From Asterias rubens (taxonomy: Eukaryota), in the NCBI RefSeq assembly GCF_902459465.1, contig NC_047062.1, positions 30,876,001 to 30,940,000 of the forward strand: DNA of 64,000 nt, read 5' to 3'. Of the stretch, positions 1 to 25,745 are shown piece after piece; within the stretch, counting starts at the first letter, position 1, and every line of letters begins with the position of its first letter. The notes under the pieces were generated by a model. The model had not been told where the DNA came from, made no database searches, and saw only the letters and a list, made by a program, of their open reading frames with translations. The position numbers were made by a program, and so were the translations under genes.

Positions 1-2088
1 TCCCCTTTTATCTCATGCTTAGGCCCAAAGCTGCTCCCAGCCCCGGGTTCTTTGGTGAGTTTTGGTGTCGATTTTACAGGAACAGCTTCCTGTTTTGGTT
101 CTTCACGATGACGTCAGTCTTGGGTTTGACGGCGGTCAATTTGGAGCGCTATGTAGCCATCGTCCACCCACACAAATACAATACTATTTTCATCAAACGA
201 AACAAATACATCATGATTGTTGCGTGTTGGGTTTTGGCCGCAGTTTCAAGATCTTACTTCTTCTTTATCTATGAAGAAGATGAAGTCGTGGGATGTCATT
301 TCAAAGGCTGGTCTAGCGGAGGAGCTTAGGTGACATTCGGCTTGTACACGTTCACGGTCAACTTCTTCGCTCCTTTCATTGTGATGATCTTTGCGCAACT
401 GAAAGTTATCTCGACGTTGAACAGACAAGTGAAGATGGTAACTTCTCGAACAGGTTAGTTAAAAAGTCAGTTTTTCCGTTGCTTATTCTTTGTCGGTCCA
501 AACCATTTTTTCCAGTTTTGCAAAGGTCCCGCCAGTGGTTCTTTCACCATCCCGTTTATATCTCGTTCCGTTTATTTGTCTTCCCGTTCAGTTGATTTTG
601 TTTCTTTTCCGTATCGTTATAAGTCCCTTTTCAATGGTTCCTTTCCCGTATTTTCCCCCCAGCCACGTTCATTTCCCCTCTTTTTTTTTTTTTGGGGGGG
701 GGGGGGGGATTTTGGAGTTTGTTATTATTTTCTCGTCCCGTTTCCCCCGTTCTCTATCATTAATTTATTCCCGTCCCTGCGATTTTCCCCCGGCTGCGCG
801 CTTGTCGCATTGGAATTGTTCTTAGTTTTTTGCAAATCCCTGTGCTGCGGATCTTGATGGAGAAAACTTTTAAGGCGTGTTTCATTCAGTTTGTCATAAT
901 TTGCATTGAGGAGGGGGGGGGGGGTAACAAACTCCAAATATTCCCTTCCAGATCTCCTTAAACATGTTAGCGTAATTGTGTAATGTTTTTATTTTATTTT
1001 ATTGTCATTTGCTTCCTGGCATTTCCGAATTACAAAGAAAGGGAGACATTACAAAGGTTTGGGAGTAAATGTTCTCGTCCCTCCGCAATCACATACCATC
1101 CCCGTACCACCACTGTGTGACCCTTCCTCTCCCCGTCCCAAGTACTCTAACCCGCCACTCCGTGCCTACAGTCACCGTGATACCCCGTTTCGATTATTTT
1201 TTACTCCCGTTATTTTCCTGTCGAGTATAATTTATTATGACCTTTTCTTTGCTTTCGTTTCCCGTTTAACCCGTTTTCTTTGCTTTGCGTTCATATTTTA
1301 CCGTCCTATATAGTTACGCAGTAAGTCGGTCCAATCCATGTTTTCAGTTTCGCACGGGTCCCGCTAGCTATTTTCATAAAAACGCTTAGAAAAAACGTTC
1401 TGTGTGCGAGATATAGGTTTGTTCGTGGTACGAGCGACAAATATATCGACTGTGTGAGGCAATGATCAAAAGTGTTCAATGGTACAACGTATCAAAAGTG
1501 ACAACGTATTGCCGACTCCTCCTCTGAAGTGAAAAGTTGCATCAGACTGTTGATCTCTAACGGAAAAATCGAGCGATTCACAGGGTACAATACTTGTATC
1601 AATGGATACCTACAAACGGGAAAATTATGGTGGGTTTAGAGCCTACTGTACTATAGTATTTCTTGATTTTGCCTTTTCTTGCAGCCTCTTTGGGAGTAAA
1701 TCCAAGAGACCAGCGTGAAATGTGGCAGCTCCGAGCCTCCCAAACCCTGGTGAAGACACTCCTGGCCTGCGTCATCACATTCGGTGTGTGCTGGACTCCA
1801 AACCAAGTCTGGTACCTACTCTTCAATGTTGGTGTACCAATGGCTCCAGGTGGACCTTTCCAACACATCACTGTCATCTTAGCTGTTGGTAATTCCTGTG
1901 TGAATCCAGTCATTTTCACAATGACCAACAAGCCGTTCCGTAAAGGGATCAGGGAGCTGTTTTGTAAGCAGCGGGATTCGAACCAGGTGACTGACAGTAC
2001 TGTAGCGACTGGCACTGTATCCGAGACCGTCTCCAATGGCTCAACGCAAGGAGTTTTGGAACAACGGTTTCCATGTCGTTACGGTTAA
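1..2088 (+). pseudogene. Class A GPCR copy 1 (divergent type), 5'-truncated by window edge; exon 1 <1..453, exon 2 1685..2088; in-frame TAG at 327-329
   Basis: ERY motif and ECL2 Cys in exon 1; donor ACAG|GTTAGT at 453/454; acceptor TTGCAG|CC at 1684/1685; exon 2 has CWTP and NPVIF. GGA GCT TAG replaces GGA GCT CAG of the other copies. Flanking sequence looks error-rich, so the stop could be an artefact. Confidence 0.6.
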
Positions 2089-2808: not shown

Positions 2809-4892
2809 ATGGAGCAGCTCAACCTCTCAGAAGCATCAGTCAAAAGTACTGATGGAGACTCCCCAATGGAAGACACCGAAGGTTTCACCAAATTCACCTT
2901 AGCTCTCTACTGCATAATCTGCGTGGTTGGTATCACTGGTAACTTACTGGTTGCCATCGTACTCCTCCGTGTGCCGTCACTGAGGTCTAACACCAGTGAT
3001 TTCTTAGTGCATCTCTCCCTTGTAGATTTCATGGCCTGTGTTATGGTCATCCCAGCTTATCTTCTGCCTAATACCCACTCTCCTCCAAACCCCGGGTTCT
3101 TCGGTGAGTTTTGGTGTCGATTTTACACCAGCGGTTTCCTGTTTTGGTTCTTCACGATGACGTCAGTCTTGGGTTTGACTGTTGTCAATTTGGAGCGCTA
3201 TGTAGCCATCGTCCACCCACACAAATACAAGACTCTTTTCATCAAACGAAACAGATACATCATGATTGCTGCGTGTTGGGCTTCGGCTGCAGTTTTAGAT
3301 TCGTCTTCCTTTTTAACGCATGAAGAAGATGAAGTAGTGGGATGTCATTTTAAAGGCTGGTCCAACAGAGGAGCTCAGGCGACACTTGGCTTGTTTTCTT
3401 TCACCGGCAAGTTCTTTTTTCCATTCGCTGTTATGATTCTTGCTCAACTGAAAGTCATCTCTACGCTGAGCAGACAAGTGAAGATGCTAACTGCTCGAAC
3501 AGGTTAGTTAGAAAGTTATTATTTCACATTAACGAGAGCAAGAAAGTATCAACTGTTTTATTTTTCAAAGGACTCGGTGCATACCATTTGTTTTTCTTTT
3601 CTGATTTTTTTAATTTAAACTAGTTAATTATATTAGAGTAACTTTAATAGGGAATAAATTGACAATTCGTTTTCCCCTACTTTGACTTGAGCTATAGGCG
3701 TATTGGAATAAATGCAAAGCCACATCAATATTAAGAGATACACGTTTTAGCCTCTAAGCCCATAGACCAATACCAATGCGCAAGCGCAGACTGTTGAATG
3801 AGGTGCATTGTGGGATATATATGGATCAAATTTGGACACCAGCTAGACCACAATGCACCTAATTCCAAGCTTTACGCGCGCGCCCCGGTATTTGCGAAAA
3901 GGTCTGTGACCCAATGAAAACTGCTAGCACTCGACCCCGATGATCCACCCCCTGATCGTCTGCAGATTGAAGGAACACGTTGCCTTGGATCGGTCGAGTT
4001 GGTCTTTGAAAAGCGTTCTGTAAACCGTTTGTTCTAAAATCGATATGGTTAGAAAGATGTTGTAAAAGTAGAATACAATGATCTACACAAATATGCCTCG
4101 AAATTGCGTGGTTTTCTTTTCACCTCGTCGACTAACACGGTAATTTTGAGTGATACTTGTGTGAATCATTATTTTCTACTTTTAAAACATCTTTCTAACC
4201 ATATGCATTTCATAAACGGTTTCAAACGCTTTTTATACACCAACTCGTCCAATACAAGGCAACGTGTTCCTTTAAAGCAAAATCAGTTTGTTTTTGTTAC
4301 AATTACCTTATAGGGTAATTTCATTGAATCAATGCTGACAATTATGGAATTTTTGTTATGATAGACCGACTGTGGGGCATGCAGATACAAAAAGTTTGAT
4401 GATCCCTCTGATTTTAGTTCGACTGATCATGCCGTATCAAAATGGGTACCACGAAAACATGTAGATTTACCTCTTTTTAAGATCGAACCTAACGCGTTAG
4501 TTTGTATCGACTTTGCCTTTTCTACAGCCTCTATGGGAGTCAATCCAAGAGACCAGCGTGAAATGTGGCAGCTCCGAGCCTCCCAAACCCTGGTGAAGAC
4601 ACTCCTGGCCTGCGTCATCACATTCGGTGTGTGCTGGACTCCAAACCAAGTCTGGTTCCTGCTCTTCAATATTGGAGTTCATGTGACTCTAGGTGATCCT
4701 ATCCACCGTCTCACTGTCATCTTAGCCGTTGGTAATTCCTGTGTGAATCCAGTCATTTACACAATGACCAACAAGCCGTTCCGTAAAGGGATCAGGGAGC
4801 TGTTTTGTAAGCAGCGGGATTCGAACCAGGTGACTGACGGTGTAGCGACTGGCACTGTGTCTCAGACCGTCTCCAATACCCAAGAACAATAA
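2809..4892 (+). CDS. Class A GPCR copy 2 (chimeric: unique N-terminus, B-type body, A-type tail); exons 2809..3502 and 4528..4892, 352 aa
   Basis: 7TM motifs GN (TM1), LSLVD (TM2), C..ERY (TM3), CWTP (TM6), NPVIY (TM7); phase-1 GT-AG intron joins RT-G|CC-SMG in frame; 694+365 nt. Confidence 0.9.
3967..4275. mobile_element. Non-autonomous TIR element, Kolobok-like, in B-type intron (copies 10358..10669, 20370..20681, 29960..30275)
   Basis: TIR AGGAACACGTTGCCTTG / CAAGGCAACGTGTTCCT; flanks TTGA and TTAA; RR..YY termini. Confidence 0.7.
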
Positions 4893-5278
4893 GCGAGAAG
4901 AAGGTCACGATGGGGCCAACCATGCGAGGGGTATCGGGACAATGAGCATTTCACGAAATCACGGCAGCAACCCACTTTATGATTTTGTGTTTTGCACAAC
5001 TGTTTATACTGCATAATCATTGTGTATGTCGTGGATACTTTCGTAATGTACAGTTTCGATGAACTTGCTGAACAACTAAAGAAAACACGCGAATAAGACA
5101 AAAACCACGGATTGCGCTCCGTTTACGCAAAAACCCAAATGATCACGGTAATAAGACATCTTATAAGCGAATGCTCAGATAAACAAACGTTTTTTATCAC
5201 AATTATAGCACAACACGAGGTCAATGTCAAAACAAATTATTGTATTGTTAAGAGGTACATGGTTCAAGGGAGTTTTGA

Positions 5279-5651
5279 TTAAAGACACCGGACACTGTTG
5301 GTAATTGTCAAAGACCAGTCTTCTCACTTGGTGTCTCTCAACACTATGCATAAAATAACAAACCTGGGAAAATTTGAGCTCAATATTGGTCGTCGAAGTT
5401 GCGAGATAATAATGAAAGACAAAACACCCTTGTCACACGATGTTGTGTGCTTTCAGATTGAGTTAGAGAGCTCAAAATCTAATTCCGAGTTCTCGAAATC
5501 AAATTTGTTGAAAATTACTTCTGTCTCGAAAACTACGTCACTTCAGAGGGAGCAGTTTCTCACGATGTTTTATAAATTCAACCTTTCCCAAGGATTGTTG
5601 CTTATATACTTATTATTTTGAGTAATTGCCAATAGTGTCCACTGCCTTTAA
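5279..5651. mobile_element. Kolobok-like MITE in spacer S1 (copies 8318..8690, 18327..18699, 27902..28274)
   Basis: TTAA target duplication; imperfect TIR AGACACCGGACACTGTTGGTAATT / AATTGCCAATAGTGTCCACTGCCT; relatives at 47775, 49493 and 54820. Confidence 0.75.
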
Positions 5652-5919
5652 AACCTTTGGTGCGAGAACAAAAAACATTCCATGACAATATAACTCCCTT
5701 TTTCTTCTTCTGTTTTTCTTATATAAAAGATTATTAAGTTTTTACTACATAAATTTGTGTACAATAGTCGTGCACTCATGCTAAAAATCCCCCGGCCCCG
5801 AAAGAGCCATAAAAACCGCACGATTTATACTTAATAATGATATCAACTGTAAAGGTAACTTAACATCTCACTTTGGTTTTCAACTGAGTTGGTTGACGAA
5901 GAATTTCTATATCAGTCAC

Positions 5920-5927
5920 TGACGTCA
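5920..5927. promoter_or_regulatory. Perfect CRE palindrome TGACGTCA 228-231 bp upstream of GPCR ATGs (also 8959, 15928, 18968, 25516, 28543)
   Basis: ATCAGTCACTGACGTCAAAT is invariant in both A- and B-type upstream regions at a fixed distance; function is inferred only. Confidence 0.5.
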
Positions 5928-6147
5928 AATTATTCCACCGGCCTCTTGGCGGACGGATGCAAAGAGTGCAAATTTTCATATTTTGTTTTCATAGCAGGAG
6001 CAAAAAAGGCTGCAACTGAAAATTTCGTATGATAACGCATGAACTCATTTAATGAGTAGAGCTGAAAAATACCATACAGAATTCTTGTGAGAAGAAATTC
6101 CGTGACAAATATTTCAACTCAAGACACAAGCCATAAACTAAACCATC

Positions 6148-7931
6148 ATGGATCGATTTGAGAGTCTTCGCACGACTTTACCAACAGTTTTCCAAGAAGC
6201 AAATAGTGACGAGGATGTTGCAACGAAAGAAAGCGATGCGTTCACCAAGTTCGTCACATCTCTCTACTGCATAATCTGCGTGGTTGGTATCACTGGTAAC
6301 TTACTGGTTGCCATCGTACTCCTCCGTGTGCCGTCACTGAGGTCTAACACCAGTGATTTCTTAGTGCATCTCTCCCTTGTAGATTTCATGGCCTGTGTTA
6401 TGGTCATCCCAGCTTATCTTCTGCCTAATACCCACTCTCCTCCAAACCCCGGGTTCTTCGGTGAGTTTTGGTGTCGATTTTACACCAGCGGTTTCCTGTT
6501 TTGGTTCTTCACGATGACGTCAGTCTTGGGTTTGACTGTTGTCAATTTGGAGCGCTATGTAGCCATCGTCCACCCACACAAATACAAGATCATTTTCATC
6601 AAACGGAACAAATACATCATGATTGCTGCGTGTTGGGGTTGTTCCACACTTTCAAAATCTTACAATTGGTTTATATTTGAAGAAGATGAAGTAGTGGGAT
6701 GTCATTTTAAAGGCTGGTCTAACAGAGGAGCTCAGGCGGCATTTGGCTTGTTCACTTTTACGGTCCAATTCTTCGCTCCGTTCACAGTGATGATTTTTGC
6801 GCAGCTGAAAGTTATCTCGACGCTGAACAGACAAGTGAAGATGTTAGCTACTCGAACAGGTTAGTTAATCAGTCTTTACATATCTCAAGATTGACGAGAA
6901 ATTTAATGTATCAATATTTTCCGTTCTTCAATGGACTCAGTGCATACAATTTGTTTTTCTTTTTTGGGTATTCAGCAAATATCGTGTTATGCATCATACA
7001 TTGATACGATTTAGTTGTGGCTTACACCTACTCGTGTAATAGGCGCCTTTATAAAGCCGGCACCTTTAGAGAAGGCCAGGGTATACGTTTCCGTTCGTGC
7101 CATTGATGACCCGGCGAAAACTTTCGGCACTCGACCGCGATCCAACCGGTGGTTTAATAAATAATTTTAATTTAAATTTTTTTATTTTATAATAACCGTT
7201 ATAAGAAATTGCATTGAAGCGATTAAACTATTTATGACGACACACTGCTAAAACGAAAAAAAAATCAAATTTGTACACTAATTTCGGCCTTAACATTTAC
7301 ATCGGTGTTATTTCAATACCATTGTGGTGACTACTTTGATTCTTAATGATGTGACAACACAATTTGTGTAAATTGTAGCCGTCCAAGTTGATGGTGTAGA
7401 CTGACTGTGAGGCAATGATCTAAAGTATTTCGTTGCATTTTAGCGCTTCTGGACACAGTTGCGATGATCTTGAACGGCTTAGTACCGTACAACACACATT
7501 TGGAGATTTAACGGTGGTTGACTCGCACCTTATGTTTTATTTTGTGTCGACTGCATTCTCTTGCAGCCTCTTTGGGAGTAAATCCAATCAACCAGGATAA
7601 AATGTGGCAGCTCCGAGCCTCCCAAACCCTCGTGAAGACACTCCTGGCATGCGTCATCACATTCGGTGTGTGCTGGATTCCAAACCAAGTCTGGTTCCTG
7701 CTCTTTAACTTCGGTGTTCCATTAAATCTAGGTGGACCTGATCACCATCTCACTGTCATCTTAGCCGTTGGTAATTCCTGTGTGAATCCAGTCATTTACA
7801 CAATGACCAACAAGCCGTTCCGTAAAGGGATCAGGGAGCTGTTTTGTAAGCAGCGGGATTCGAACCAGGTGACTGACGGTGTAGCGACTGGCACTGTGTC
7901 TCAGACCGTCTCCAATACCCAAAAACAATAG
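6148..7931 (+). CDS. Class A GPCR copy 3 (chimeric: B-type head, A-type body); exons 6148..6859 and 7567..7931, 358 aa
   Basis: Same 7TM motifs; donor 6859/6860, acceptor TTGCAG at 7566; open frame throughout. Confidence 0.9.
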
Positions 7932-9186
7932 GCGAGAAGAAGGTCACGATGGGGCCAACCATGCGAGGGGTATCGGGACAATGAGCATTTCACGAAATTA
8001 CGGCAGCAACCCACTTTATGATTTTGTGTTTTGCACAACTGTTTATACTGCATAATCATTGTGTATGTCGTGGATACTTTCGTAATGTACAGTTTCGATG
8101 AACTTGCTGAACAACTAAAGAAAACACGCGAATAAGACAAAAACCACGGATTGCGCTCCGTTTACGCAAAAACCCAAATGATCACGGTAATAAGACATCT
8201 TGTAAGCGAATGCTCAGATAAACAAACGTTTTTTATCACAATTATAGCACAACACGAGGTCAATGTCAAAATAAATTATTGTATTGTTAAGAGGTACATG
8301 GTTCAAGGGAGTTTTGATTAAAGACACCGGACACTGTTGGTAATTGTCAAAGACCAGTCTTCTCACTTGGTGTCTCTCAACACTATGCATAAAATAACAA
8401 ACCTGTGAAAATTTGAGCTCAGTATTGGTCGTCGAAGTTGCGAGATAATAATGAAAGACAAAACACCCTTGTCACACGATGTTGTGTGCTTTCAGATTGA
8501 GTTAGAGAGCTCAAAATCTAATTCCGAGTTCTCGAAATCAAATTTGTTGAAAATTACTTCTGTCTCGAAAACTACGTCACTTCAGAGGGAGCAGTTTCTC
8601 ACAATGTTTTATAAATTCAACCTTTCCCAAGGATTGTTGCTTATATACTTATTATTTTGAGTAATTGCCAATAGTGTCCACTGCCTTTAAAACCTTTTGT
8701 GCGAGTACAAAAAACATTCCATGACAATATAACTCCCTTTTTCTTCTTCTGTTTTTCTTATATAAAAGATTATTAAGTTTTTACTACATAAATTTGTGTA
8801 CAATAGTCGTGCACTCATGCTAAAAATCCCCCGGCCCCGAAAGAGCCATAAAAACCGCACGATTTATACTTAATAATGATATCAACTGTAAAGGTAACTT
8901 AACATCTCACTTTGGTTTTCAACTGAGTTGGTTGACGAAGAATTTCTATATCAGTCACTGACGTCAAATTATTCCACCGGCCTCTTGGCGGACGGATGCA
9001 AAGAGTGCAAATTTTCATATTTTGTTTTCATAGCAGGAGCAAAAAAGGCTGCAACTGAAAATTTCGTATGATAACGCATGAACTCATTTAATGAGTAGAG
9101 CTGAAAAATACCATACAGAATTCTTGTGAGAAGAAATTCCGTGACAAATATTTCAACTCAAGACACAAGCCATAAACTAAACCATC

Positions 9187-11286
9187 ATGGATCGATTTGA
9201 GAGTCTTCGCACGACTTTACCAACAGTTTTCCAAGAAGCAAACAGTGACGAGGATGTTGCAACGAAAGAAAGCGATGCGTTCACCAAGTTCGTCACATCT
9301 CTCTACTGCATAATCTGCGTGGTTGGTATCACTGGTAACTTACTGGTTGCCATCGTACTCCTCCGTGTGCCGTCACTGAGGTCTAATACCAGTGATTTCT
9401 TAGTGCATCTCTCCCTTGTAGATTTCATGGCCTGTGTTATGGTCATCCCAGCTTATCTTCTGCCTAATACCCACTCTCCTCCAAACCCCGGGTTCTTCGG
9501 TGAGTTTTGGTGTCGATTTTACACCAGCGGTTTCCTGTTTTGGTTCTTCACGATGACGTCAGTCTTGGGTTTGACTGTCAATTTGGAGCGCTATGTAGCC
9601 ATCGTCCACCCACACAAATACAAGACTCTTTTCATCAAACGAAACAGATACATCATGATTGCTGCGTGTTGGGCTTCGGCTGCAGTTTTAGATTCGTCTT
9701 CCTTTTTAACGCATGAAGAAGATGAAGTAGTGGGATGTCATTTTAAAGGCTGGTCCAACAGAGGAGCTCAGGCGACACTTGGCTTGTTTTCTTTCACCGG
9801 CAAGTTCTTTGTTCCATTCGCTGTGATGATTCTTGCTCAACTGAAAGTCATCTCTACGCTGAGCAGACAAGTGAAGATGCTAACTGCTCGAACAGGTTAG
9901 TTAGAAAGTTATTATTTCACATTAACGAGAGCAAGAAAGTATCAACTGTTTTATTTTTCAAAGGACTCGGTGCATACCATTTGTTTTTCTTTTCTGATTT
10001 TTTTTAATTTAAACTAGTTAATTATATTAGAGTAACTTTAATAGGGAATAAATTGACAATTCGTTTTCCCCTACTTTGACTTGAGCTATAGGCGTATTGG
10101 AATAAATGCAAAGCCACATCAATATTAAGAGATACACGTTTTAGCCTCTAAGCCCATAGACCAATACCAATGCGCAAGCGCAGACTGTTGAATGAGGTGC
10201 ATTGTGGGATATATATGGATCAAATTTGGTCACCAGCTAGACCACAATGCACCTAATTCCAAGCTTTACGCGCGCGCCCCGGTAATTGCGAAAAGGTCTA
10301 TGACCCAATGAAAACTGCTAGCACTCGACCCCGATCCAACCCCAGATCGTCTGCAGATTGAAGGAACACGTTGCCTTGGATCGGTCGAGTTGGTCTTTGA
10401 AAAGCGTTCTGTAAACCGTTTGTTCTAAAATCGATATAGTTAGAAAGATGTTGTAAAAGTAGAATACAATGATCTACACAAATATGCCTCGAAATCGCAT
10501 GGTTTTCTTTTCACCTCGTCGACTAACACGGTAATTTTCAGTGATACTTGTGTGAATCATTATTTTCTACTTTTAAAACATCTTTCTAACCATATGCATT
10601 TCATAACAAACGGTTTCAAACGCTTTTTATACACCAACTCGTCCGATACAAGGCAACGTGTTCCTTTAAAGCAAAATCAGTTTGTTTTTGTTACAATTAC
10701 CTTATAGGGTAATTTCATTGAATCAATGCTGACAATTATGTAATTTTTGTTATGATAGACCGACTGTGGGGCATGCAGATACAAAAAGTTTGATGATCCC
10801 TCCGATTTTAGTTCGACTGATCATGCCGTATCAATATGGGTACCACGAAAACATGTAGATTTACCTCTTCTTAAGATCGAACCTAACGCGTTAGTTTGTA
10901 TCGACTTTGCCTTTTCTACAGCCTCTATGGGAGTCAATCCAAGAGACCAGCGTGAAATGTGGCAGCTCCGAGCCTCCCAAACCCTGGTGAAGACACTCCT
11001 GGCCTGCGTCATCACATTCGGTGTGTGCTGGACTCCAAACCAAGTCTTGTTCCTGCTCTTCAATATTGGAGTTCATGTGACTCTAGGTGATCCTATCCAC
11101 CGTCTCACAGTCATCTTAGCCGTTGGTAATTCCTGTGTGAATCCAGTCATTTACACAATGACCAACAAGCCGTTCCGTAAAGGGATCAGGGAGCTGTTTT
11201 GTAAGCAGCGGGATTCGAACCAGGTGGCTGACGGTGTAGCGACTGGCACTGTGTCTGAGACCGTCTCCAATGCCCAAGAACAATAG
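9187..11286 (+). CDS. Class A GPCR copy 4 (B type); exons 9187..9895 and 10922..11286, 357 aa; one-Val deletion in TM3
   Basis: 7TM motifs; LTVN instead of LTVVN before ERY; NQVL instead of NQVW in TM6; canonical splice sites. Confidence 0.85.
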
Positions 11287-11646
11287 GAGAGAAGAAGATC
11301 ACGTTGGGAAACAAACAATAGAAAGTTGGAAAGTGGAAGTAATTTTACCTAGATGTGAACTTTCATCCTTTAGTAATTACATAGATTTTCAGCAAACAAT
11401 TTTTGTTATTATTACGGAACGTTCGCGGTAGCCGGATGTCAATTTTGTAAGTACGTTGAATGAAATGAAGTAAATATCATGGCATTGCACCGAAGTTTAA
11501 AGCAGTGTCACATTATTCAAGAATAGAGCATTGAGGGCGTTTCCGAGCAGCCGATTATGTGTGTTTTTTTTTAAGAAAAGGGGGCATTTATACATGGTGG
11601 TGTTGTAAAAAATAATATCCTTTACGTTGCAACAGATTAACATTGT

Positions 11647-12020
11647 TTAAAGCCATTGGACCCTTTCGGTAAACAGTGTTGTCCAAGGCCCACACTTTGT
11701 GTACCACAACTTCTATTTCAAATAACAAACCTGTGAAAATTTAGGCCTAATCGGTCATCGGAGTCGGGAGAAAACAACGGAAAATCCCACCCTTGTTTCC
11801 GCGCGTTTCGCCGTGTCATGACATGTGTTTAAAATAAATCCGTAATTCTGGTTAACGAGAATTTATATTGTTTTGCGGTTTTCTCAAAAGTAAAGCATTT
11901 CATGGAATAATATTTCAAGAGAAGTCTTTCACCATTGCCTTCTGTAAACCCTGTAAGTTATTTGTAAATCTGTGAACTTTTTTCTTTTTTTTCTGAACCG
12001 AAAGGGTCCAATGGCTTTAA
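11647..12020. mobile_element. Kolobok-like MITE in spacer S2 (copies 21657..22029, 31250..31622)
   Basis: TTAA on both sides; TIR AGCCATTGGACCCTTTCGGT / ACCGAAAGGGTCCAATGGCT. Confidence 0.8.
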
Positions 12021-13295
12021 TGCACCATGTTACATCCAGTTTAAGTTTAAGATAAAGTGCAAGTTTGTATTTAACATAAAACAATTGCCAACATTACAAA
12101 ACGTCGATCACCTCATACATATTTCATACTGCAAGGTATGACCAAAAATTGTGTAATATAACAGTAAAAATAGGATCCAACAACAACACCGCCATTTTAA
12201 AACCAGTCTAAAATAAGAGGACCTGCGTTTGAGGGGAAGTATCAATTTGTTGTTAATTTAATGGTTTGTGTCTGTTAACTATTTCAAAATAATGTTTTTA
12301 ATTGAATTTTTAAACAGCTGACATCCTGTTTCCACTAAGCACATTACAACGAACAAAAAAAAATTAATATTGATGTTGCTGGGAAAACAGAAACAATTCG
12401 TTTTTCAAAATTTCTTGCACGATCATTATGCTCATTATTATTTTCCGATGCAGCAATTGAGTTGGATTTGCATGCAACGGTGTAAGTAAATCGCTCAATG
12501 TATAATTAACAAGTGTAAATCACAAATACAGGTGGTTAGCTACGTACACGAAGAGTGCCTATACGTTCGCGAACACGGCTAAAATACCTGAGAAACTGTG
12601 AAACACACTTGACCCCGCTTTTGTTTTCGCAGGTTCTTCATTTTACGGTAAGCAGAACCGTTAAAAAGTAGCCCTGTTGTGAACTCATCGGACGTTATTA
12701 CTAAAATGAACATTACAGGGTGTTAAGGCTAACAAACAGTTGCTGACAGTGTGAGCACTTGATATAATCCACCATTAATATACATAAACTGATGTTTGAT
12801 ATTGGGTCGGTAGAAATTGGATCAGCCATCTGATGGGTCACTAGAAAATAGTGAAAACCGATTACACATTAATATTTTGCGTTACATCGACTTAAACAAA
12901 ATGAATAAAACGCTCACAGAGCGATAAACTCCAAACGGGAAATTGGTTTTGTTTTGTTCCTCAACAAACAATGACATTTCAGACAGAAATATTGCAAGTG
13001 ATGTTTTCTACTATCATCATCATTAGACCGTGTAAGTTTTATGTAAATCTGTAAAAAAAAATTCTCCGTAAAGTTCCTTAATTGATTGTAGGTAGGGTGT
13101 TGTGAAACGCTTTTGCATCCGTTTCTTTTTATTCAAATCGATCAGTTGCCTTGTCGATTAGGAAATAAATTAATATAAGTAAAGAGTCAATGGTGACCTT
13201 TGTATCATTCGAAGAGAGTTGAAGGAAGAATACACAGAGTACGTTACTGCTCTGTTCTTTCTTATCAATCACTTAACCCTCTAGTCCCTGCATGC

Positions 13296-13848
13296 CACCG
13301 CCCGAGTTTCTGAAAACCAATTTTTCAAGATTCTTGCAGTAAACAACTGGAATCGTAATTCAATTTTTAAAAGATAGCTTAATACATAATATGCACAATT
13401 TTTTAACCTTTCGGTAATGTTTGTATAAAAGTACAAGCTCCCATTGGGAACAATAATCGGCTCTCGAATATTTGTTTGTAAAGATTATTTCATTGAAGCT
13501 AATGACGATGAAATAATTTAGCTCATACCAATTAGTAAACACAACGGAAACTGTATTTATTCATCATTAATATTGATATTGTCGAAAACTAACGCCTTCG
13601 CATTTAATTAGTTCGAGCATTGAGTCAGATAAAAGCATTGAAAAGCTATTGTGTCCATTTTATCCTTACAAAAAAATATTCGAGAGCCGATTATTGTTCC
13701 CAATGGGAGCTTGTACTTTTATACAAACATTACCGAAAGGGTAAAAAAATGTGCATAAATATTAAGCTATCTTTTAAAAATTGAACTACGATTCCAGTTG
13801 TTTACTGCAAGAATCTTGAAAAATTGGTTTTCAGAAACTCGGGCGGTG
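13296..13848. repeat. Long inverted repeat / foldback element, ~190-bp arms and ~175-bp spacer (copies 23305..23858, 32882..33436)
   Basis: 13296..~13485 is the near-exact reverse complement of ~13662..13848; no clear TSD. Confidence 0.8.
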
Positions 13849-15395
13849 CTTTTAATGAAACAAACCGTAAAGGAAAAGACGTCTGCATTCAGCCTGGTTC
13901 GATTTAAAAATCTGGGAGACCTACATTTTACAAGGACTGCCAAATTATTATAAGTAATCACAACAAATTGTATAGGCCTACACGTGAATTCTTTTTTAGA
14001 TTGCGAAGCAGCGAAGGGGAATAATGTAAAGGTCATGAACAGGTACTGGACATGAACAGATGCTGACCATTATGAAACAGAGTCTCTGCCAGTAAGGTAT
14101 TCACCCGACCCATATACTTTCACTTATTTTTGTATTTTGGGAGTCATGGCGTACATACACAAAAACGATCTGTTTGATTTTGTACGCACTCCGAGATCCA
14201 CGTAAGGTTATTATTGTGGTTTTAAGGCATATAGGGTCCACAGTCCACACATGCAAGTACAGAGCGTTTGGAATAATAAGGCCAGATACACGACATTGGC
14301 CCCTAAAATGGTCATTGCTTGAAACGGTCCAGGAAGGTTCATTAGGATTATACAAAATTACCAGTAGGACTATACAAGCACAGGAATGTAATTTGGTGTG
14401 CTCTAACTAATTGAATTCCAAGATTAGCTGTTTGTAGCAATTCAACAATAATGTATTGAGGAAACCCACAAAACCTCAATTGATAACATAAAAGACATTC
14501 TCCTTGCCAATGACAATAAAGTAAATACCAACATTCCTGCTGCGCAGCCAATACTAATACAAATGACGCCCTCTTGTGTTGCACCAAACACCTGTGCGGT
14601 GACGTATGGTTTTGATTGGTCCGTAGTGCCGGTATGCAGGTGTCGCGCTTGCGCATTGTCCTTGCCGTGCGTTAAACTCTTTTCTTCGACGAAAAAGTGA
14701 CAAATAAATTGTGTGCATATCTATCAATCATGGACTGCATGGTGGTCGAGTTTGAACTTTACTTTGACTTCACAACGAGACGCATATCACGCCACAGACA
14801 GAGGTGGGGGTGTTTTCACTCTATCTAGTGAGCCTCACCATGTACTAGGTTTTCTTCCTACATGATCTCATGAGAAATGTAGTTAAAACAAATAATAATA
14901 TAGGCCTAAGCCTAATAAAAAACAAAGCAAACGGACTTAAATTAAATAATAGTGTTAGGTTCAGGGGCCCACGTACGCTTTGTTTACGTGACAAACATGA
15001 CAAACATTGTTAATAAAAAATTCGCACCAAGCAAGTTCACAAGGGAATTAACATTTTCACTACTAACTGTTCAAATCATATGCCCGACATTAAGATTATG
15101 TTTGACTTACCCCGACCATAAGTTTTGCAAGGGAGATGAGCTCAGTTTATTCAACCATCTTCAACTCCTCGCACATTTCCACACTTTTTAAATGTCGTGC
15201 GTGGCGAAAAAAACGCCCGCCCTCTGTAGATCTAAAATGGTAAGTGCAATAGTCTGGCGCATCATACAAGTACGTAAAGTACATACATTCTGTTAAGGAA
15301 CCAGACTGTATAGTTGCTATTTATGGCAGTATGTTATTGGTCAATATTAAACACACCCTATTATAAGCGCATAATTTTGACCAATAAAATTAGGT

Positions 15396-15549: not shown

Positions 15550-16157
15550 CCTTGCAACACGGCCTTCATAATAAATGTCAAAATGTTCAAAACAATAACT
15601 GTTTGCAAGTGTTCCTTCAAGCACAAAAACGAGGCCAAGATCGAAACAAATAATTGTATTGCACAGAGGAATGTTAGGAGATTTGATTAATAAAACCTTT
15701 TTTGAGAGAACAAAAAAACATTAAATGACAACTCTTTACTTGCACCTTTAAAATATTATAGTTATTACTTAATAAACGTGTGTTTATCATTCGTGCATTC
15801 ATGCTAAAAAAACGGCCTCGGCAGAGCCATAAAAACGGAAACATTAATATTCTACATTTTATCAACTGAAAATGTAACTTAATTTTGTTCAACTAAGTTG
15901 GTTGAAGAAGAGTTTTGTATCAGTCACTGACGTCAAATCATTCGGCCGGCCTTTTGGCGGATTTATGCAAAGAGCACATTTTCGAGTACTCATTGCGAGA
16001 GCAGACACGGTAGCAAATTGAGCAGGCTGCAACTGATGTCCGTGTGATAAAACCGCATGATAAATTCACTCAACGAGCACTGAACTTAATTCTTGTGAGC
16101 AGAACATTCTGTGACAAAATATTCCAACTCAAGACACACGCCAAAAACTAAACCATC

Positions 16158-17940
16158 ATGGATCAATTTGAGAGTCTTGGCACGACTTTATCAACAGTTT
16201 TCCAAGGAACAAAGAGTTCTGAGGAGGTTCCAATGGAAGACAACGATGCGTTTGCCAAGTTCATCTTATCTCTCTACTGCACGATCTGCGTGGTTGGTAT
16301 CACAGGTAACTTACTCGTTGCCATCGTACTCCTCCGTGTGCCGTCACTGCGGTCTAACACCAGTGATTTCTTGGTGCATCTCTCCCTTGTAGATTTCATG
16401 GCCTGTGTTCTGGTCATCCCAGCTTATCTTCTGCCTAATACCCACTCTCCTCCAAACCCCGGGTTCTTCGGTGAGTTTTGGTGTCGATTTTACACCAGCG
16501 GTTTCCTGTTTTGGTCCTTCGCGTTGACGTCAATCTTGGGTTTGACTGTTGTCAATTTGGAGCGCTATGTAGCCATCGTCCACCCACACAAATACAAGAC
16601 CATTTTCATCAAACGGAACAAATACATCATGATTGCTGCGTGTTGGGGTTGTTCCACACTTTCAAAATCTTACAATTGGTTTATATTTGAAGAAGATGAA
16701 GTAGTGGGATGTCATTTTAAAGGCTGGTCTAACAGAGGAGCTCAGGCGGCATTTGGCTTGTTCACTTTTACGGTCCAATTCTTCGCTCCGTTCACAGTGA
16801 TGATTTTTGCGCAGCTGAAAGTTATCTCGACGCTGAACAGACAAGTGAAGATGTTAGCTACTCGAACAGGTTAGTTAATCAGTCTTTACATATCTCAAGA
16901 TTGACGAGCAATTTAATGTATCAATATTTTCCATTCTTCAATGGACTCAGTGCATACAATTTGTTTTTCTTTTTTGGGTATTCAGCAAATATCGTGTTAT
17001 GCATCATACATTGATACGATTTAGTTGTGGCTTACACCTACTCGTGTAATAGGCACCTTTATAAAGCCGGCACCTTTAGAGAAGGCCAGGGTATACGTTT
17101 CCGTTCGTGCCATTGATGACCCGGCGAAAACTTTCGGCACTCGACCGCGATCCAACCGGTGGTTTAATAAATAATTTTAATTTTAATTTTTTTATTTTAT
17201 AATAACCGTTATAAGAAAATGCATTGAAGCGATTAAACTATTTTTGACGACACACTGCTCAAACGAAAAAAAATCAAATTTGTACACTAATTTCGGCCTT
17301 AACATTTACATCGGTGTTATTTCAATACCATTGTGGTGACTACTTTGATTCTTAATGATGTGACAACACCATTTGTGTAAATTGTAGCCGTCCAAGTTGA
17401 TGGTGTAGACTGACTGTGAGGCAATGATCTAAAGTATTTCGTTGCATTTTAGCGCTTCTGGACACAGTTGCGATGATCTTGAACGGCTTAGTACCGTACA
17501 ACACACATTTGAAGATTTAACGGTGGTTGACTCGCACCTTATGTTTTATTTTGTGTCGACTGCATTCTCTTGCAGCCTCTTTGGGAGTAAATCCAATCAA
17601 CCAGGATAAAATGTGGCAGCTCCGAGCCTCCCAAACCCTGGTGAAGACACTCCTGGCATGCGTCATCACATTCGGTGTGTGCTGGATTCCAAACCAAGTC
17701 TGGTTCCTGCTCTTCAACTTCGGTGTTCCATTAAATCTAGGTGGACCTGATCGCCATCTCACTGTCATCTTAGCCGTGGGTAATTCCTGTGTGAATCCAG
17801 TCATTTACACAATGACCAACAAGCCGTTCCGTAAAGGGATCAGGGAGCTGTTTTGTAAGCAGCGGGATTCGAACCAGGTGACTGACGGTGTAGCGACTGG
17901 CACTGTGTCTCAGACCGTCTCCAATACCCAAGAACAATAG
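16158..17940 (+). CDS. Class A GPCR copy 5 (A type); exons 16158..16869 and 17576..17940, 358 aa
   Basis: 7TM motifs intact; canonical GT-AG phase-1 intron. Confidence 0.9.
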
Positions 17941-19195
17941 GCGAGAAGAAGGTCACGATGGGGCCAACCATGCGAGGGGTATCGGGACAATGAGCATTTC
18001 ACGAAATCACGGCAGCAACCCACTTTATGATTTTGTGTTTTGCACAACTGTTTATACTGCATAATCATTGTGTATGTCGTGGATACTTTCGTAATGAACA
18101 GTTTCGATGAACTTGCTGAACAACTAAAGAAAACACGCGAATAAGACAAAAACCACGGATTGCGCTCCGTTTACGCAAAAACCCAAATGATCACGGTAAT
18201 AAGACATCTTGTAAGCGAATGCTCAGATAAACAAACGTTTTTTATCACAATTATAGCACAACACGAGGTCAATGTCAAAACAAATTATTGTATTGTTAAG
18301 AGGTACATGGTTCAAGGGAGTTTTGATTAAAGACACCGGACACTGTTGGTAATTGTCAAAGACCAGTCTTCTCACTTGGTGTCTCTCAACACTATGCATA
18401 AAATAACAAACCTGTGAAAATTTGAGCTCAATATTGGTCGTCGAAGTTGCGAGATAATAATGAAAGACAAAACACCCTTGTCACACGATGGTGTGTGCTT
18501 TCAGATTGAGTTAGAGAGCTCAAAATCTAATTCCGAGTTCTCGAAATCAAATTTGTTGAAAATTACTTCTGTCTCGAAAACTACGTCACTTCAGAGGGAG
18601 CAGTTTCTCACAATGTTTTATAAATTCAACCTTTCCCAAGGATTGTTGCTTATATACTTATTATTTTGAGTAATTGCCAATAGTGTCCACTGCCTTTAAA
18701 ACCTTTTGTGCGAGAACAAAAAACATTCCATGACAATATAACTCCCTTTTTCTTCTTCTGTTTTTCTTATATAAAAGATTATTAAGTTTTTACTACATAA
18801 ATTTGTGTACAATAGTCGTGCACTCATGCTAAAAATCCCCCGGCCCCGAAAGAGCCATAAAAACCGCACGATTTATACTTAATAATGATATCAACTGTAA
18901 AGGTAACTTAACATCTCACTTTGGTTTTCAACTGAGTTGGTTGACGAAGAATTTCTATATCAGTCACTGACGTCAAATTATTCCACCGGCCTCTTGGCGG
19001 ACGGATGCAAAGAGTGCAAATTTTCATATTTTGTTTTCATAGCAGGAGCAAAAAAGGCTGCAACTGAAAATTTCGTATGATAACGCATGAACTCATTTAA
19101 TGAGTAGAGCTGAAAAATACCATACAGAATTCTTGTGAGAAGAAATTCCGTGACAAATATTTCAACTCAAGACACAAGCCATAAACTAAACCATC

Positions 19196-21297
19196 ATGGA
19201 TCGATTTGAGAGTCTTCGCACGACTTTACCAACAGTTTTCCAAGAAGCCAACAGTGACGAGGATGTTGCAACGAAAGAAAGCGATGCGTTCACCAAGTTC
19301 GTCACATCTCTCTACTGCATAATCTGCGTGGTTGGTATCACTGGTAACTTACTGGTTGCCATCGTACTCCTCCGTGTGCCGTCACTGAGGTCTAATACCA
19401 GTGATTTCTTAGTGCATCTCTCCCTTGTAGATTTCATGGCCTGTGTTATGGTCATCCCAGCTTATCTTCTGCCTAATACCCACTCTCCTCCAAACCCCGG
19501 GTTCTTCGGTGAGTTTTGGTGTCGATTTTACACCAGCGGTTTCCTGTTTTGGTTCTTCACGATGACGTCAGTCTTGGGTTTGACTGTTGTCAATTTGGAG
19601 CGCTATGTAGCCATCGTCCACCCACACAAATACAAGACTCTTTTCATCAAACGAAACAGATACATCATGATTGCTGCGTGTTGGGCTTCGGCTGCAGTTT
19701 TAGATTCGTCTTCCTTTTTAACGCATGAAGAAGATGAAGTAGTGGGATGTCATTTTAAAGGCTGGTCCAACAGAGGAGCTCAGGCGACACTTGGCTTGTT
19801 TTCTTTCACCGGCAAGTTCTTTGTTCCATTCGCTGCGATGATTCTTGCTCAACTGAAAGTCATCTCTACGCTGAGCAGACAAGTGAAGATGCTAACTGCT
19901 CGAACAGGTTAGTTAGAAAGTTATTATTTCACATTAACGAGAGCAAGAAAGTATCAACTGTTTTATTTTTCAAAGGACTCGGTGCATACCATTTGTTTTT
20001 CTTTTCTGATTTTTTTTAATTTAAACTAGTTAATTATATTAGAGTAACTTTAATAGGGAATAAATTGACAATTCGTTTTCCCCTACTTTGACTTGAGCTA
20101 TAGGCGTATTGGAATAAATGCAAAGCCACATCAATATTAAGAGATACACGTTTTAGCCTCTAAGCCCATAGACCAATACCAATGCGCAAGCGCAGACTGT
20201 TGAATGAGGTGCATTGTGGGATATATATGGATCAAATTTGGACACCAGCTAGACCACAATGCACCTAATTCCAAGCTTTACGCGCGCGCCCCGGTAATTG
20301 CGAAAAGGTCTATGACCCAATGAAAACTGCTAGCACTCGACCCCGATCCAACCCCAGATCGTCTGCAGATTGAAGGAACACGTTGCCTTGGATCGGTCGA
20401 GTTGGTCTTTGAAAAGCGTTCTGTAAACCGTTTGTTCTAAAATCGATATAGTTAGAAAGATGTTGTAAAAGTAGAATACAATGATCTACACAAATATGCC
20501 TCGAAATCGCGTGGTTTTCTTTTCACCTCGTCGACTAACACGGTAATTTTCAGTGATACTTGTGTGAATCATTATTTTCTACTTTTAAAACATCTTTCTA
20601 ACCATATGCATTTCATAACAAACGGTTTCAAACGCTTTTTATACACCAACTCGTCCGATACAAGGCAACGTGTTCCTTTAAAGCAAAATCAGTTTGTTTT
20701 TGTTACAATTACCTTATAGGGTAATTTCATTGAATCAATGCTGACAATTATGGAATTTTTGTTATGATAGACCGACTGTGGGGCATGCAGATACAAAAAT
20801 TTGATGATCCCTCCGATTTTAGTTCGACTGATCATGCCGTATCAATATGGGTACCACGAAAACATGTAGATTTACCTCTTCTTAAGATCGAACCTAACGC
20901 GTTAGTTTGTATCGACTTTGCCTTTTCTACAGCCTCTATGGGAGTCAATCCAAGAGACCAGCGTGAAATGTGGCAGCTCCGAGCCTCCCAAACCCTGGTG
21001 AAGACACTCCTGGCCTGCGTCATCACATTCGGTGTGTGCTGGACTCAAAACCAAGTCTGGTTCCTGCTCTTCAATATTGGAGTTCATGTGACTCTAGGTG
21101 ATCCTATCCACCGTCTCACAGTCATCTTAGCCGTTGGTAATTCCTGTGTGAATCCAGTCATTTACACAATGACCAACAAGCCGTTCCGTAAAGGGATCAG
21201 GGAGCTGTTTTGTAAGCAGCGGGATTCGAACCAGGTGGCTGACGGTGTAGCGACTGGCACTGTGTCTGAGACCGTCTCCAATGCCCAAGAACAATAG
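19196..21297 (+). CDS. Class A GPCR copy 6 (B type); exons 19196..19907 and 20933..21297, 358 aa; TM6 Pro to Gln
   Basis: 7TM motifs; CWTQ (codon CAA 21046-21048) replaces CWTP. Confidence 0.85.
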
Positions 21298-24200: not shown

Positions 24201-25745
24201 CGAGATCCACGTAAGGTTATTATTGTGGTTTTAAGGCATATAGGGTCCACAGTCCACACATGCAAGTACAGAGCGTTTGGAATAATAAGGCCAGATACAC
24301 GACATTGGCCCCTAAAATGGTCATTGCTTGAAACGGTCCAGGAAGGTTCATTAGGATTATACAAAATTACCAGTAGGACTATACAAGCACAGGAATGTAA
24401 TTTGGTGTGCTCTAACTAATTGAATTCCAAGATTAGCTGTTTGTAGCAATTCAACAATAATGTATTGAGGAAACCCACAAAACCTCAATATTGATAACAT
24501 AAAAGACATTCTCCTTGCCAATGACAATAAAGTAAATACCAACATTCCTGCTGCGCAGCCAATACTAATACAAATGACGCCCTCTTGTGTTGCGCCAAAC
24601 ACCTGTGCGGTGACGTATGGTTTTGATTGGTCCGTAGTGCCGGTATGCAGGTGTCGCGCTTGCGCATTGTCCTTGCCGTGCGTGAAACTCTTTTCTTCGA
24701 CGAAAAAGTGACAAATAAATTGTGTGTGTGCTTTTTCGCTTGTTTGTGCATATCTATCAATCATGGACTGCATGGTGGTCGAGTTTGAACTTTACTTTGA
24801 CTTCACAACGAGACGCATATCACGCCACAGACAGAGGTGGGGGTGTTTTCACTCTATCTAGTGAGCCTCACCATGTACTAGGTTTTCTTCCTACATGATC
24901 TCATGAGAAATGTAGTTAAAACAAATAATAATATAGGCCTAAGCCTAATAAAAAACAAAGCAAACGGACTTAAATTAAATAATAGTGTTAGGTTCAGGGG
25001 CCCACGTACGCTTTGTTTACGTGACAAACATGACAAACATTGTTAATAAAAAATTCGCACCAAGCAAGTTCACAAGGGAATTAACATTTTCACAACTAAC
25101 TGTTCAAATCATATGCCCGACATTAAGATTATGTTTGACTTACCCCGACCATAAGTTTTGCAAGGGAGATGAGCTCAGTTTATTCAACCATCTTCAACTC
25201 CTCGCACATTTCCACACTTTTTAAATGTCGTGCGTGGCGAAAAAAACGCCCGCCCTCTGTAGATCTCAAATGATTAATAAAACTTTTTTTGAGAGAACAA
25301 AAAAACATTAAATGACAACTCTTTACTTGCACCTTTAAAATATTATAGTTATTACTTAATAAACGTGTGTTTATCATTCGTGCATTCATGCTAAAAAAAA
25401 CGGCCTCGGCAGAGCCATAAAAACGGAAACATTAATATTCTACATTTTATCAACTGAAAATGTAACTTAATTTTGTTCAACTAAGTTGGTTGAAGAAGAG
25501 TTTTGTATCAGTCACTGACGTCAAATCATTCGGCCGGCCTTTTGGCGGATTTATGCAAAGAGCACATTTTCGAGTACTCATTGCGAGAGCAGACACGGTA
25601 GCAAATTGAGCAGGTTGCAACTGATGTCCGTGTGATAAAACCGCATGATAAATTCACTCAACGAGCACTGAACTTAATTCTTGTGAGCAGAACATTCTGT
25701 GACAAAATATTCCAACTCAAGACACACGCCAAAAACTAAACCATC

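What the first reader, a model, noticed from the sequence alone, without database searches (positions are those of the whole stretch)
6148..7931. Copy 3 is an intact B-head/A-body recombinant receptor
Seen: upstream spacer, N-terminus and TM3 (FFTMTSV) are B type. ICL2 onward, the intron, ECL2, ECL3 and the tail are A type. The crossover window is ~6524-6590, around the ERY codons, and the frame is fully open. Inference: a new TM3/ECL2/ECL3 pocket combination under B-type upstream control, created in one recombination step.
Basis: partly seen in the sequence, partly recalled or inferred. Interest (0 to 1): 0.7.

Follow-up and report, generated by a model that had tools for sequence, protein, structure and literature searches.

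The report
Recombinant hybrid receptor gene in starfish
One gene in a young tandem array of orphan receptor genes of the common starfish is a real, intact hybrid whose front third comes from one neighbouring gene type and the rest from the other; it arose by ordinary recombination between repeats, like hybrid colour-vision genes in humans, and its function is untested.

Summary
Confirmed. Window 6148-7931 is an intact two-exon class-A GPCR gene of 358 aa, identical to Asterias rubens RefSeq XP_033632146.1. It is the third gene in an eight-gene tandem array built from alternating A and B paralogues.

The 1.25-kb upstream spacer and the coding sequence up to 6523 are B type. Everything from 6591 on is A type: the rest of exon 1, the intron, exon 2 and the 3' flank. 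The switch lies in a 67-bp stretch (6524-6590) that is identical in A and B and holds the ERY codons.

The head differs from B copies by 0.5-1.2%, and the body from A copies by 0-1.9%. A and B differ from each other by 8-39%.

- **Derived, not ancestral:** three A. amurensis proteins are A-head plus A-body, and the body of copy 3 nests inside the A. rubens A clade.
- **Not an assembly artefact:** two independent metagenome contigs (2.7 and 3.0 kb, other haplotypes) carry the same junction. In a third sample only the identical exon-1 protein is on record.
- **Mechanism:** ordinary non-allelic homologous recombination, as in Lepore globin and hybrid opsin genes. The neighbouring gene g2 and one metagenome allele are mosaics too.

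Expression and ligand remain untested; four RNA runs gave no reads of any copy. This is a known kind of event.

The parts
4709..4832 (+). Second junction window, in exon 2 of the upstream neighbour g2 (TM7/helix 8 codons). g2 is B type up to 4708 and A type from 4833.
   Evidence: Informative-site calls. Independent contig L031 also covers it, and L032 covers its right-hand part (from 4692).
4893..6147 (+). Intergenic spacer upstream of g3. It is the type that normally lies between an A gene and a B gene, that is, B-type upstream DNA.
   Evidence: 6-15 substitutions in 1248 nt against the spacers upstream of g4, g6 and g8. Essentially unalignable with the A upstream region except the proximal ~420 nt at ~82%.
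6148..6523 (+). B-type part of exon 1: N-terminus, TM1, TM2, ECL1 and the upper two thirds of TM3, including F120, T122, M123 and V126.
   Evidence: 2-3 substitutions in 367 nt against B copies and 30 in 367 against A copies. Groups with B at 100/98 support. Residue map.
6524..6590 (+). Crossover window: 67 bp identical in A and B (except g4's 3-bp deletion). It holds the ERY codons (6550-6558). Base 6590 is a C>T private to the reference haplotype and L031 (T148I).
   Evidence: The 6590 polymorphism is.
6591..6859 (+). A-type part of exon 1: ICL2, TM4, ECL2, TM5 and the start of ICL3.
   Evidence: 0 substitutions in 269 nt against g5 and g7, and 51-54 in 269 against B copies. Identical to A in the tree.
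6860..7566 (+). A-type intron (phase 1, GT..AG).
   Evidence: 12 substitutions in ~700 nt against the A introns. About 39% mismatch in a forced alignment with B introns, which are ~1025 nt long.
7567..7931 (+). A-type exon 2: ICL3, TM6, ECL3, TM7, helix 8, tail and the TAG stop.
   Evidence: 5-7 substitutions in 365 nt against A and 32-33 against B. Pfam 7tm_1 scores 43.7 bits.
16158..17940 (+). g5, an example of the A parent type, intact at 358 aa (g7 at 25746-27515 is the other).
   Evidence: It equals XP_033632380.1. The A-head plus A-body combination is conserved in three A. amurensis proteins.
19196..21297 (+). g6, an example of the B parent type, 358 aa (g4 at 9187-11286 and g8 at 28774-30888 are the others).
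   Evidence: It equals XP_033632481.1.

Best explanation
g3 is a genuine hybrid gene made by non-allelic homologous recombination between a B-type and an A-type paralogue of the same head-to-tail array in Asterias rubens. The exchange resolved in the last 67 bp (6524-6590, lower TM3 to ICL2) of a ~330-bp tract where A and B are nearly identical, just before the two types become about 19% divergent.

The product keeps the B-type 5' flank, N-terminus, TM1, TM2 and upper TM3. Everything downstream is A type. The gene is open and all class-A hallmarks are intact.

Inferred consequences:
- It should fold as a normal 7TM receptor.
- It should couple to G proteins like A, because ICL2, ICL3, the cytoplasmic ends of TM5 and TM6, and helix 8 are A type.
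- Its binding pocket is mixed. Positions 3.36, 3.37 and 3.40 of TM3 and the N-terminus come from B. ECL2, TM5, TM6, ECL3 and TM7 come from A.
- It is probably transcribed from B-type upstream DNA.

I cannot tell which form the exchange took. It could be a crossover of the Lepore deletion type, a crossover of the duplication type, or the right-hand end of a 1.8-kb conversion patch.

Shown: the mosaic structure, the derived polarity and the presence of the junction in other haplotypes. Inferred: folding, coupling, pocket change and promoter use.
For: - **One clean switch in phylogenetic signal.** The head is 0.5-1.2% from B and 8% or unalignable from A. The body is 0-1.9% from A and 9-39% from B. 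The runs test gives P about 1e-20.
- **Segment trees.** The head groups with B at 100/98 support, and the body is identical to A.
- **Polarity.** Three A. amurensis proteins are A-head plus A-body. The g3 body sits with g5 (98/97) inside the A clade (100/100).
- **Independent assemblies.** L031 (ERZ1764465, 2735 nt, 7 mismatches and no gaps against 4542-7276) and L032 (ERZ1764464, 3036 nt, 19 mismatches against 4692-7728) show the same switch and share the locus markers 4892A and 6348C (L032 also 7631C, which L031 does not reach). A third sample, ERZ23498375, encodes the same exon-1 protein as L032.
- **Recombination substrate.** Synonymous divergence between A and B is 0.07 in TM1-TM3 and 0.05 in TM7-tail, against 0.43 and 0.22 in between. 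Both junctions lie in these homogenised blocks.
- **Other mosaics in the same family.** g2 is tripartite. Metagenome allele L033 is a B gene with an A-type TM3 patch that ends in the same 6524-6590 window.
- **Intactness.** The ORF is open. Pfam 7tm_1 scores 93.3 and 43.7 bits. The motifs N1.50, D2.50, C3.25 with the ECL2 Cys, ERY, W4.50, P5.50, CWIP and NPVIY are present. The AF2 model has seven helices plus helix 8, pLDDT 79 and pTM 0.76.
Against: - I saw no raw spanning reads. The supporting contigs come from iterative de Bruijn assemblers, which can in principle carry a wrong path forward from a smaller k.
- There is no transcript evidence. Four RNA-seq runs gave zero reads of any array member. 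No RNA holder was found.
- No reciprocal A-head/B-body product turned up among the cluster members.
- No B-type protein was seen in A. amurensis, so the history of the B parent is unanchored.
- Two single sites break the pattern: 6348 in the head, and 7744 in exon 2 (the second base of codon 297, R297H), which carries the B letter.
Confidence: 0.9

Rival explanations
1. Sub-variant of the mechanism: both novel junctions (4709-4832 in g2 and 6524-6590 in g3) were made at once. A gap-repair or gene-conversion patch copied about 1.8 kb (A tail, A-to-B spacer, B head) from a canonical A-to-B junction. It copied this over the original B tail, the long B-to-A spacer and an A head.
For: The segment between the two junctions is one continuous copy of the canonical A-tail/spacer/B-head segment, with an offset of 3039-3040 nt. 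Both ends lie in the two homogenised blocks. The regular alternation B-A-B-A-B-A-B would be restored if g3 had once been a plain A gene.
Against: The patch is no closer to any one putative donor than the donors are to each other: 6-15 substitutions against 6-15 among them. So there is no signature of a recent donor. g2 also has a left junction near 2884. That fits equally well with a B-type conversion tract inside g2 followed by a separate crossover that made g3.
Confidence: 0.3
2. Assembly artefact: the reference assembler joined reads from a B gene and an A gene across their shared TM3 sequence.
For: The array consists of 96-98% identical 10-kb units, which is a hard target. A 31-mer index cannot phase the 67-bp window.
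Against: Two independent metagenome contigs from other haplotypes run colinearly through both junctions for 2.7 and 3.0 kb and share g3-specific markers. In a third sample only the identical exon-1 protein is on record, with no DNA. g3 also has private substitutions on both sides of the junction.
Confidence: 0.02
3. Copy 3 keeps the ancestral combination, and the A and B types are the derived ones.
For: TM3 of the B head (FFTMTSV) also occurs in the outlying paralogues g1 and P0004. So the B-like TM3 state is old.
Against: It would need two or more exchanges with donors that do not exist in the genome, since the next paralogues are only 76-77% identical. A-head plus A-body is conserved in A. 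amurensis. The g3 body nests inside the A. rubens A clade, and its head is identical in protein to B heads. Only about 0.1% fixed difference separates g3 from either parent.
Confidence: 0.02

Closest known systems
Human red/green cone opsin hybrid genes (OPN1LW/OPN1MW), made by unequal recombination in a head-to-tail array (established knowledge, not tested here)
   Same: Class-A GPCR paralogues sit in a tandem array. Non-allelic homologous recombination gives intact hybrids with the 5' part of one gene and the 3' part of the other. The hybrids sit behind the 5' parent's upstream DNA and segregate in the population.
   Different: The exchange here lies inside a coding exon (TM3/ICL2), in a 67-bp identity window. 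The ligand and phenotype are unknown, and the parents are orphan receptors.
Haemoglobin Lepore / anti-Lepore delta-beta globin fusion genes (established knowledge)
   Same: A single exchange between neighbouring paralogues gives a fusion gene driven by the upstream partner's promoter. Both a deletion form and a duplication form are possible, as here.
   Different: The protein family is different. Here it cannot be told whether the deletion form or the duplication form occurred.
Echinoderm lineage-specific rhodopsin-type GPCR expansions: sea-urchin surreal-GPCRs and Acanthaster OR-like receptors (PMC5442662, PMC7042368)
   Same: Orphan rhodopsin-type GPCRs of echinoderms lie in tandem arrays, and array neighbours are each other's closest relatives. 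The present family has about 30 loci in the genome, many of them clustered.
   Different: Membership in those named groups was not tested. The genes here have one phase-1 intron and encode 358 aa; the sea cucumber OR-like genes of PMC7042368 are described as mostly single-exon, and the 63 ApORs average 522 aa. No expression in sensory tissue was shown.
Galanin, somatostatin and beta-adrenergic receptors (best solved-structure matches and the source of the RefSeq names)
   Same: 7TM class-A fold with sequence matches at E 1e-23 to 1e-21.
   Different: The similarity is only generic, and the matches are equally good to peptide and amine receptors. Position 3.32 is Phe, not the Asp that aminergic receptors need. 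The RefSeq name 'octopamine receptor beta-2R-like' is therefore not supported.

Membership tests
Class-A (rhodopsin-type) GPCR, Pfam PF00001 | Match to the 7tm_1 profile above the gathering score | tested here: met
   The exon-1 product scores 93.3 bits and the exon-2 product 43.7 bits, against a cut-off of 30.5.
Class-A (rhodopsin-type) GPCR, Pfam PF00001 | Seven helices plus hallmark motifs: N1.50, D2.50, the C3.25-ECL2 Cys pair, E/DRY, W4.50, P5.50, CWxP and NPxxY | tested here: met
   Motifs found at GNLLV 50, SLVDF 76, C109, ERY 135-137, W163, C185, P211, CWIP 273 and NPVIY 311. The AF2 model has 7 TM helices plus helix 8, with pLDDT 79.
Recombinant (hybrid) gene from non-allelic homologous recombination | Both parental types are present, with one sharp switch of similarity between them | tested here: met
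Recombinant (hybrid) gene from non-allelic homologous recombination | The junction lies in a tract of sequence identity between the parents | tested here: met
   6524-6590 is identical in A and B. It is the 3' end of a block with dS 0.07.
Recombinant (hybrid) gene from non-allelic homologous recombination | The parental combination is older than the hybrid (polarity) | tested here: met
   A-head plus A-body occurs in three A. amurensis proteins, and the g3 body nests within the A. rubens A clade. No B parent was found in A. amurensis, so this holds for the A parent only.
Recombinant (hybrid) gene from non-allelic homologous recombination | The junction is confirmed in independent DNA data | tested here: met
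   ENA contigs L031 and L032. In a third sample only the identical exon-1 protein is on record, with no DNA. Raw spanning reads were not seen.
Recombinant (hybrid) gene from non-allelic homologous recombination | A reciprocal product, or presence/absence polymorphism | not tested
   No A-head/B-body exon 1 appears among the 15 cluster members. No population data were available.
Aminergic receptor (RefSeq name 'octopamine receptor beta-2R-like') | Asp at position 3.32, which binds the amine | tested here: not met
   With R136 as 3.50, position 3.32 is F118.
Echinoderm OR-like / surreal-GPCR chemoreceptors | Clustering with the named groups, and expression in sensory tissue | not tested
   Only the tandem-array organisation is shared. 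The RNA runs gave no reads.

The most novel reading that the evidence does not exclude
The array behaves as a natural cassette-shuffling system. Two blocks kept nearly identical by recurrent conversion (TM1-TM3 and TM7-helix 8) act as fixed borders. Across these borders the N-terminus/TM3 module and the ECL2-TM5-TM6-ECL3 module are repeatedly recombined. Examples are g3, g2 and the L033 allele, whose patch ends in the same 67-bp window. On this reading g3 is a young, selectively maintained receptor. It carries the only lesion-free gene with the canonical B-type N-terminus and head, now that the reference copies of all three canonical B genes carry a lesion or a change at a conserved position.
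Probability: 0.12. Interest if true: 0.55.

Novelty: new member of a known kind. Interest (0 to 1): 0.3.

Why it matters
Hybrid genes from unequal recombination are textbook, so the mechanism is not new. The gene itself is already annotated, though under an unsupported name.

The practical value is a set of ready-made natural domain swaps in an orphan starfish receptor family:
- type A
- type B
- the B-head/A-body hybrid (g3)
- a B gene with an A-type TM3 patch (L033)
- the three-part gene g2

If any member is deorphanised, these variants would show which module sets ligand specificity. They could also show whether the upstream spacer sets expression. The locus also documents very recent, ongoing exchange in an echinoderm GPCR array, with only about 0.1% fixed divergence from the parents.

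Tried and rejected
- **RNA evidence.** One raw-read lay of four RNA-seq runs (X30-X33) on 6250-6850 at 99% likeness gave zero reads in every likeness class. This is no test of expression, and it used my only read-laying run. The first run search failed because the machine was busy. The two completed searches found no RNA holder.
- **Logan contigs of DNA runs.** I did not lay them. With k = 31 they cannot phase sites 68 nt or more apart.
- **Crossover or conversion.** I asked which spacer/B-head copy is nearest to g3's head. The result was unresolved: 6-15 differences to each copy, the same as among the copies themselves.
- **Prior description.** Literature searches for this hybrid, or for gene conversion in Asterias receptor genes, found nothing relevant. 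The ant OR paper uses 'chimeric' only for misassembled gene models.
- **RefSeq names.** The 'octopamine receptor' and 'galanin receptor' names were rejected as family assignments (F at 3.32).
- One Pfam call was sent in the wrong frame and re-sent.
- **A correction of my own.** My first crossover window, 6515-6590, was narrowed to 6524-6590. Site 6523 had been masked because g8 carries the A letter there.

Full report
**What is there**

The window is chromosome piece C1:30876001-30940000 of the assembly. The RefSeq names of the proteins encoded here confirm Asterias rubens.

A tblastn of the translated finding against the window finds eight two-exon paralogues on the + strand. I number them g1 to g8:

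| Gene | Coordinates | Note |
|---|---|---|
| g1 | starts upstream; 3-455 and 1684-2049 | |
| g2 | 2809-4892 | |
| g3 | 6148-7931 | the finding |
| g4 | 9187-11286 | type B |
| g5 | 16158-17940 | type A |
| g6 | 19196-21297 | type B |
| g7 | 25746-27515 | type A |
| g8 | 28774-30888 | type B |

A self-comparison shows a roughly 10-kb unit repeated three times at 96.4-98.3% identity: 5724-15239, 15749-25272 and 25336-35074. Each unit holds one gene of type A (g5, g7), a 1.25-kb spacer, one gene of type B (g4, g6, g8) and a 4.9-kb spacer. g3 occupies the A position of the first unit.

**The gene**

- Exon 1 is 6148-6859, the intron is 6860-7566 (GT..AG, phase 1) and exon 2 is 7567-7931.
- The CDS is 1077 nt and open, 358 codons plus TAG.
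- The protein is identical to XP_033632146.1, annotated 'octopamine receptor beta-2R-like'.
- Both exon products match Pfam 7tm_1, at 93.3 and 43.7 bits.
- All class-A hallmarks are present.
- An AlphaFold model built on 27 relatives gives seven helices plus helix 8, with pLDDT 79 and pTM 0.76.
- The best solved-structure matches are generic: galanin, somatostatin and beta-2 adrenergic receptors at E 1e-23 to 1e-21.
- Counting back from R136 as position 3.50, position 3.32 is Phe. The receptor is therefore not aminergic and should be treated as an orphan.

**Checking the observation**

In a seven-locus alignment, g3 is 97-100% identical to the B loci from about 4765 to about 6540. It is 98-100% identical to the A loci from about 6590 to beyond 8200. 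The other type scores 14-85% wherever A and B differ.

Divergence of g3 by segment:

| Segment | From B copies | From A copies |
|---|---|---|
| Spacer 4900-6147 | 0.5-1.2% | unalignable |
| Head CDS 6148-6514 | 0.5-0.8% | 8.2% |
| Exon 1 body 6591-6859 | 19-20% | 0% |
| Intron | ~39% | 1.7% |
| Exon 2 | ~9% | 1.4-1.9% |

Fixed A/B sites are all B up to 6523 and all A from 6591.

Within the CDS, 106 fixed sites read 30 B then 76 A with two single-site exceptions. The chance of so few runs is about 1e-20.

At protein level g3 differs from A (g5) at 25 residues:
- 22 are inherited from B: 11 in the N-terminus, 6 in TM1, 1 in TM2 and 4 in TM3 (F120, T122, M123, V126, which are positions 3.34, 3.36, 3.37 and 3.40).
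- 3 are its own: T148I, R297H and E357K.

g3 differs from B (g6) at 46 residues, spread from ICL2 to the tail.

**Polarity**

Nucleotide trees of the two halves of exon 1, with outlying paralogues as outgroups, place the g3 head with B (100/98 support). The g3 body is identical to A.

A protein search returned three Asterias amurensis proteins, and all are A-head plus A-body. In segment trees the g3 body sits with g5 (98/97) inside an A clade that includes the A. amurensis proteins (100/100). The g3 head is identical to B heads.

The A combination is therefore older than the two species, and g3 took its body from the A. rubens A lineage. g3 is derived, not ancestral. Only about 0.1% fixed difference separates it from either parent.

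**Is it real?**

The exon-1 reading frame of g3 occurs on contigs of three independent ENA metagenome assemblies.

- L031 (ERZ1764465, k141 contig, 2735 nt) is colinear with window 4542-7276, with 7 mismatches and no gaps.
- L032 (ERZ1764464, 3036 nt) matches 4692-7728 with 19 mismatches and one gap.
- For the third sample (ERZ23498375) no DNA was available, so only the identical exon-1 protein is on record.

L031 and L032 show the same B-to-A switch. Both contain the B-type exon 2 of g2 upstream and the A-type intron downstream. They share locus-specific markers with the reference: 4892A and 6348C in both, and 7631C in L032, which alone reaches that site. They differ from the reference at sites that are private to it, including 6590, where L032 has the unmutated C.

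The hybrid is therefore a locus with several haplotypes in the population, not an assembly join. One caveat: these are assembler contigs, and I saw no raw spanning reads.

**Mechanism**

Synonymous divergence between A and B is uneven along the gene:

| Region | dS |
|---|---|
| TM1-TM3 | 0.07 |
| ICL2-TM5 | 0.43 |
| TM6-ECL3 | 0.22 |
| TM7-tail | 0.05 |

So two blocks have been homogenised by earlier exchange. Both novel junctions lie in these blocks.

The g3 junction sits at the 3' edge of the first block. This is where an exchange has to resolve before identity collapses.

The upstream neighbour g2 is itself a mosaic. It has a unique N-terminus, a B body from about 2884 to 4708 and an A tail from 4833.

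A metagenome allele, L033, is a B gene with an A-type TM3 patch. The right end of that patch falls in the same 6524-6590 window.

The simplest account is non-allelic homologous recombination. There are two readings:
- A crossover between a B gene and an A gene, of either the Lepore deletion type or the duplication type, with g2's tail junction as a separate event.
- One 1.8-kb conversion patch (A tail, spacer, B head) that made both junctions at once.

Distances to the possible donors do not separate these readings.

**What is not shown**

Expression is untested. No RNA holder was found. Four raw RNA-seq runs gave no reads of any array member, which is no test.

A changed ligand profile and use of B-type regulatory DNA are inferences from the sequence.

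**Comparison with known cases**

The closest parallels are hybrid red/green opsin genes and Lepore-type globin fusions. The mechanism and logic are the same, but here the exchange is exonic and the receptor is an orphan.

Echinoderm rhodopsin-type receptor expansions in tandem arrays are well described (PMC5442662, PMC7042368). Membership of this family in those groups was not tested. I found no prior description of this hybrid.

**Verdict**

It is a new member of a known kind, of modest interest.

Noticed in passing
window 2809-4892 (g2, XP_033632030.1): g2 is a three-part mosaic. It has a unique upstream region and N-terminus up to about 2884, a B-type body including the B intron up to 4708, and an A-type tail and 3' flank from 4833. 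It is an intact ORF of 352 aa.
   Followed up: partly
window 28811-28838 (g8): A 14-nt tandem duplication (two copies of CAGTTTTCCAAGAA) after codon 17 shifts the frame of g8. In the reference this B copy is a pseudogene.
   Followed up: partly
window ~9575/9576 (g4) and 21046-21048 (g6): g4 lacks 3 bp, which removes one Val of TM3 just before NLERY. g6 has CAA (Gln) in place of the conserved Pro 6.50 of CWxP. Together with g8, all three canonical B copies of the reference carry a lesion or a change at a conserved position, while all the A bodies are clean.
   Followed up: partly
window 327-329 (g1): g1 has an in-frame TAG where the other copies have CAG (ECL2/TM5 region). It also has a one-residue deletion in TM1. 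It is probably a pseudogene.
   Followed up: partly
L033:292-1008 (ENA ERZ23498735 scaffold_132375): A metagenome contig carries a B-type gene whose TM3 is A type at sites 6506-6523 (SFALTSI), with B sequence on both sides. It is a short conversion tract, and its right end falls in the same 6524-6590 window as the g3 junction.
   Followed up: partly
window 6148-7931 compared with g5 and g6, all CDS: Silent-site divergence between A and B is 6-9 times lower in TM1-TM3 and TM7-tail than in ICL2-TM5. In the N-terminal 36 codons dN/dS is about 1.4.
   Followed up: partly
window 5279-5654, 8318-8693, 18327-18702, 27902-28277: The A-to-B spacer holds a ~300-nt dispersed repeat that also occurs at 48237-48515 (inverted, ~79%) and 54825-55136 (~85%). 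It is probably a short interspersed element.
   Followed up: no
window 3970-4275 versus 10358-10669, 20370-20681 and 29960-30272: B-type introns match each other in inverted orientation at ~77% over ~310 nt, so each B intron contains a palindromic or foldback element. A introns lack it and are ~320 nt shorter.
   Followed up: no
window 6590: The first base next to the A-type side of the junction is a C>T (T148I). It is present in the reference and in L031 but not in L032. It is a polymorphism that arose after the recombination, directly at the junction edge.
   Followed up: partly
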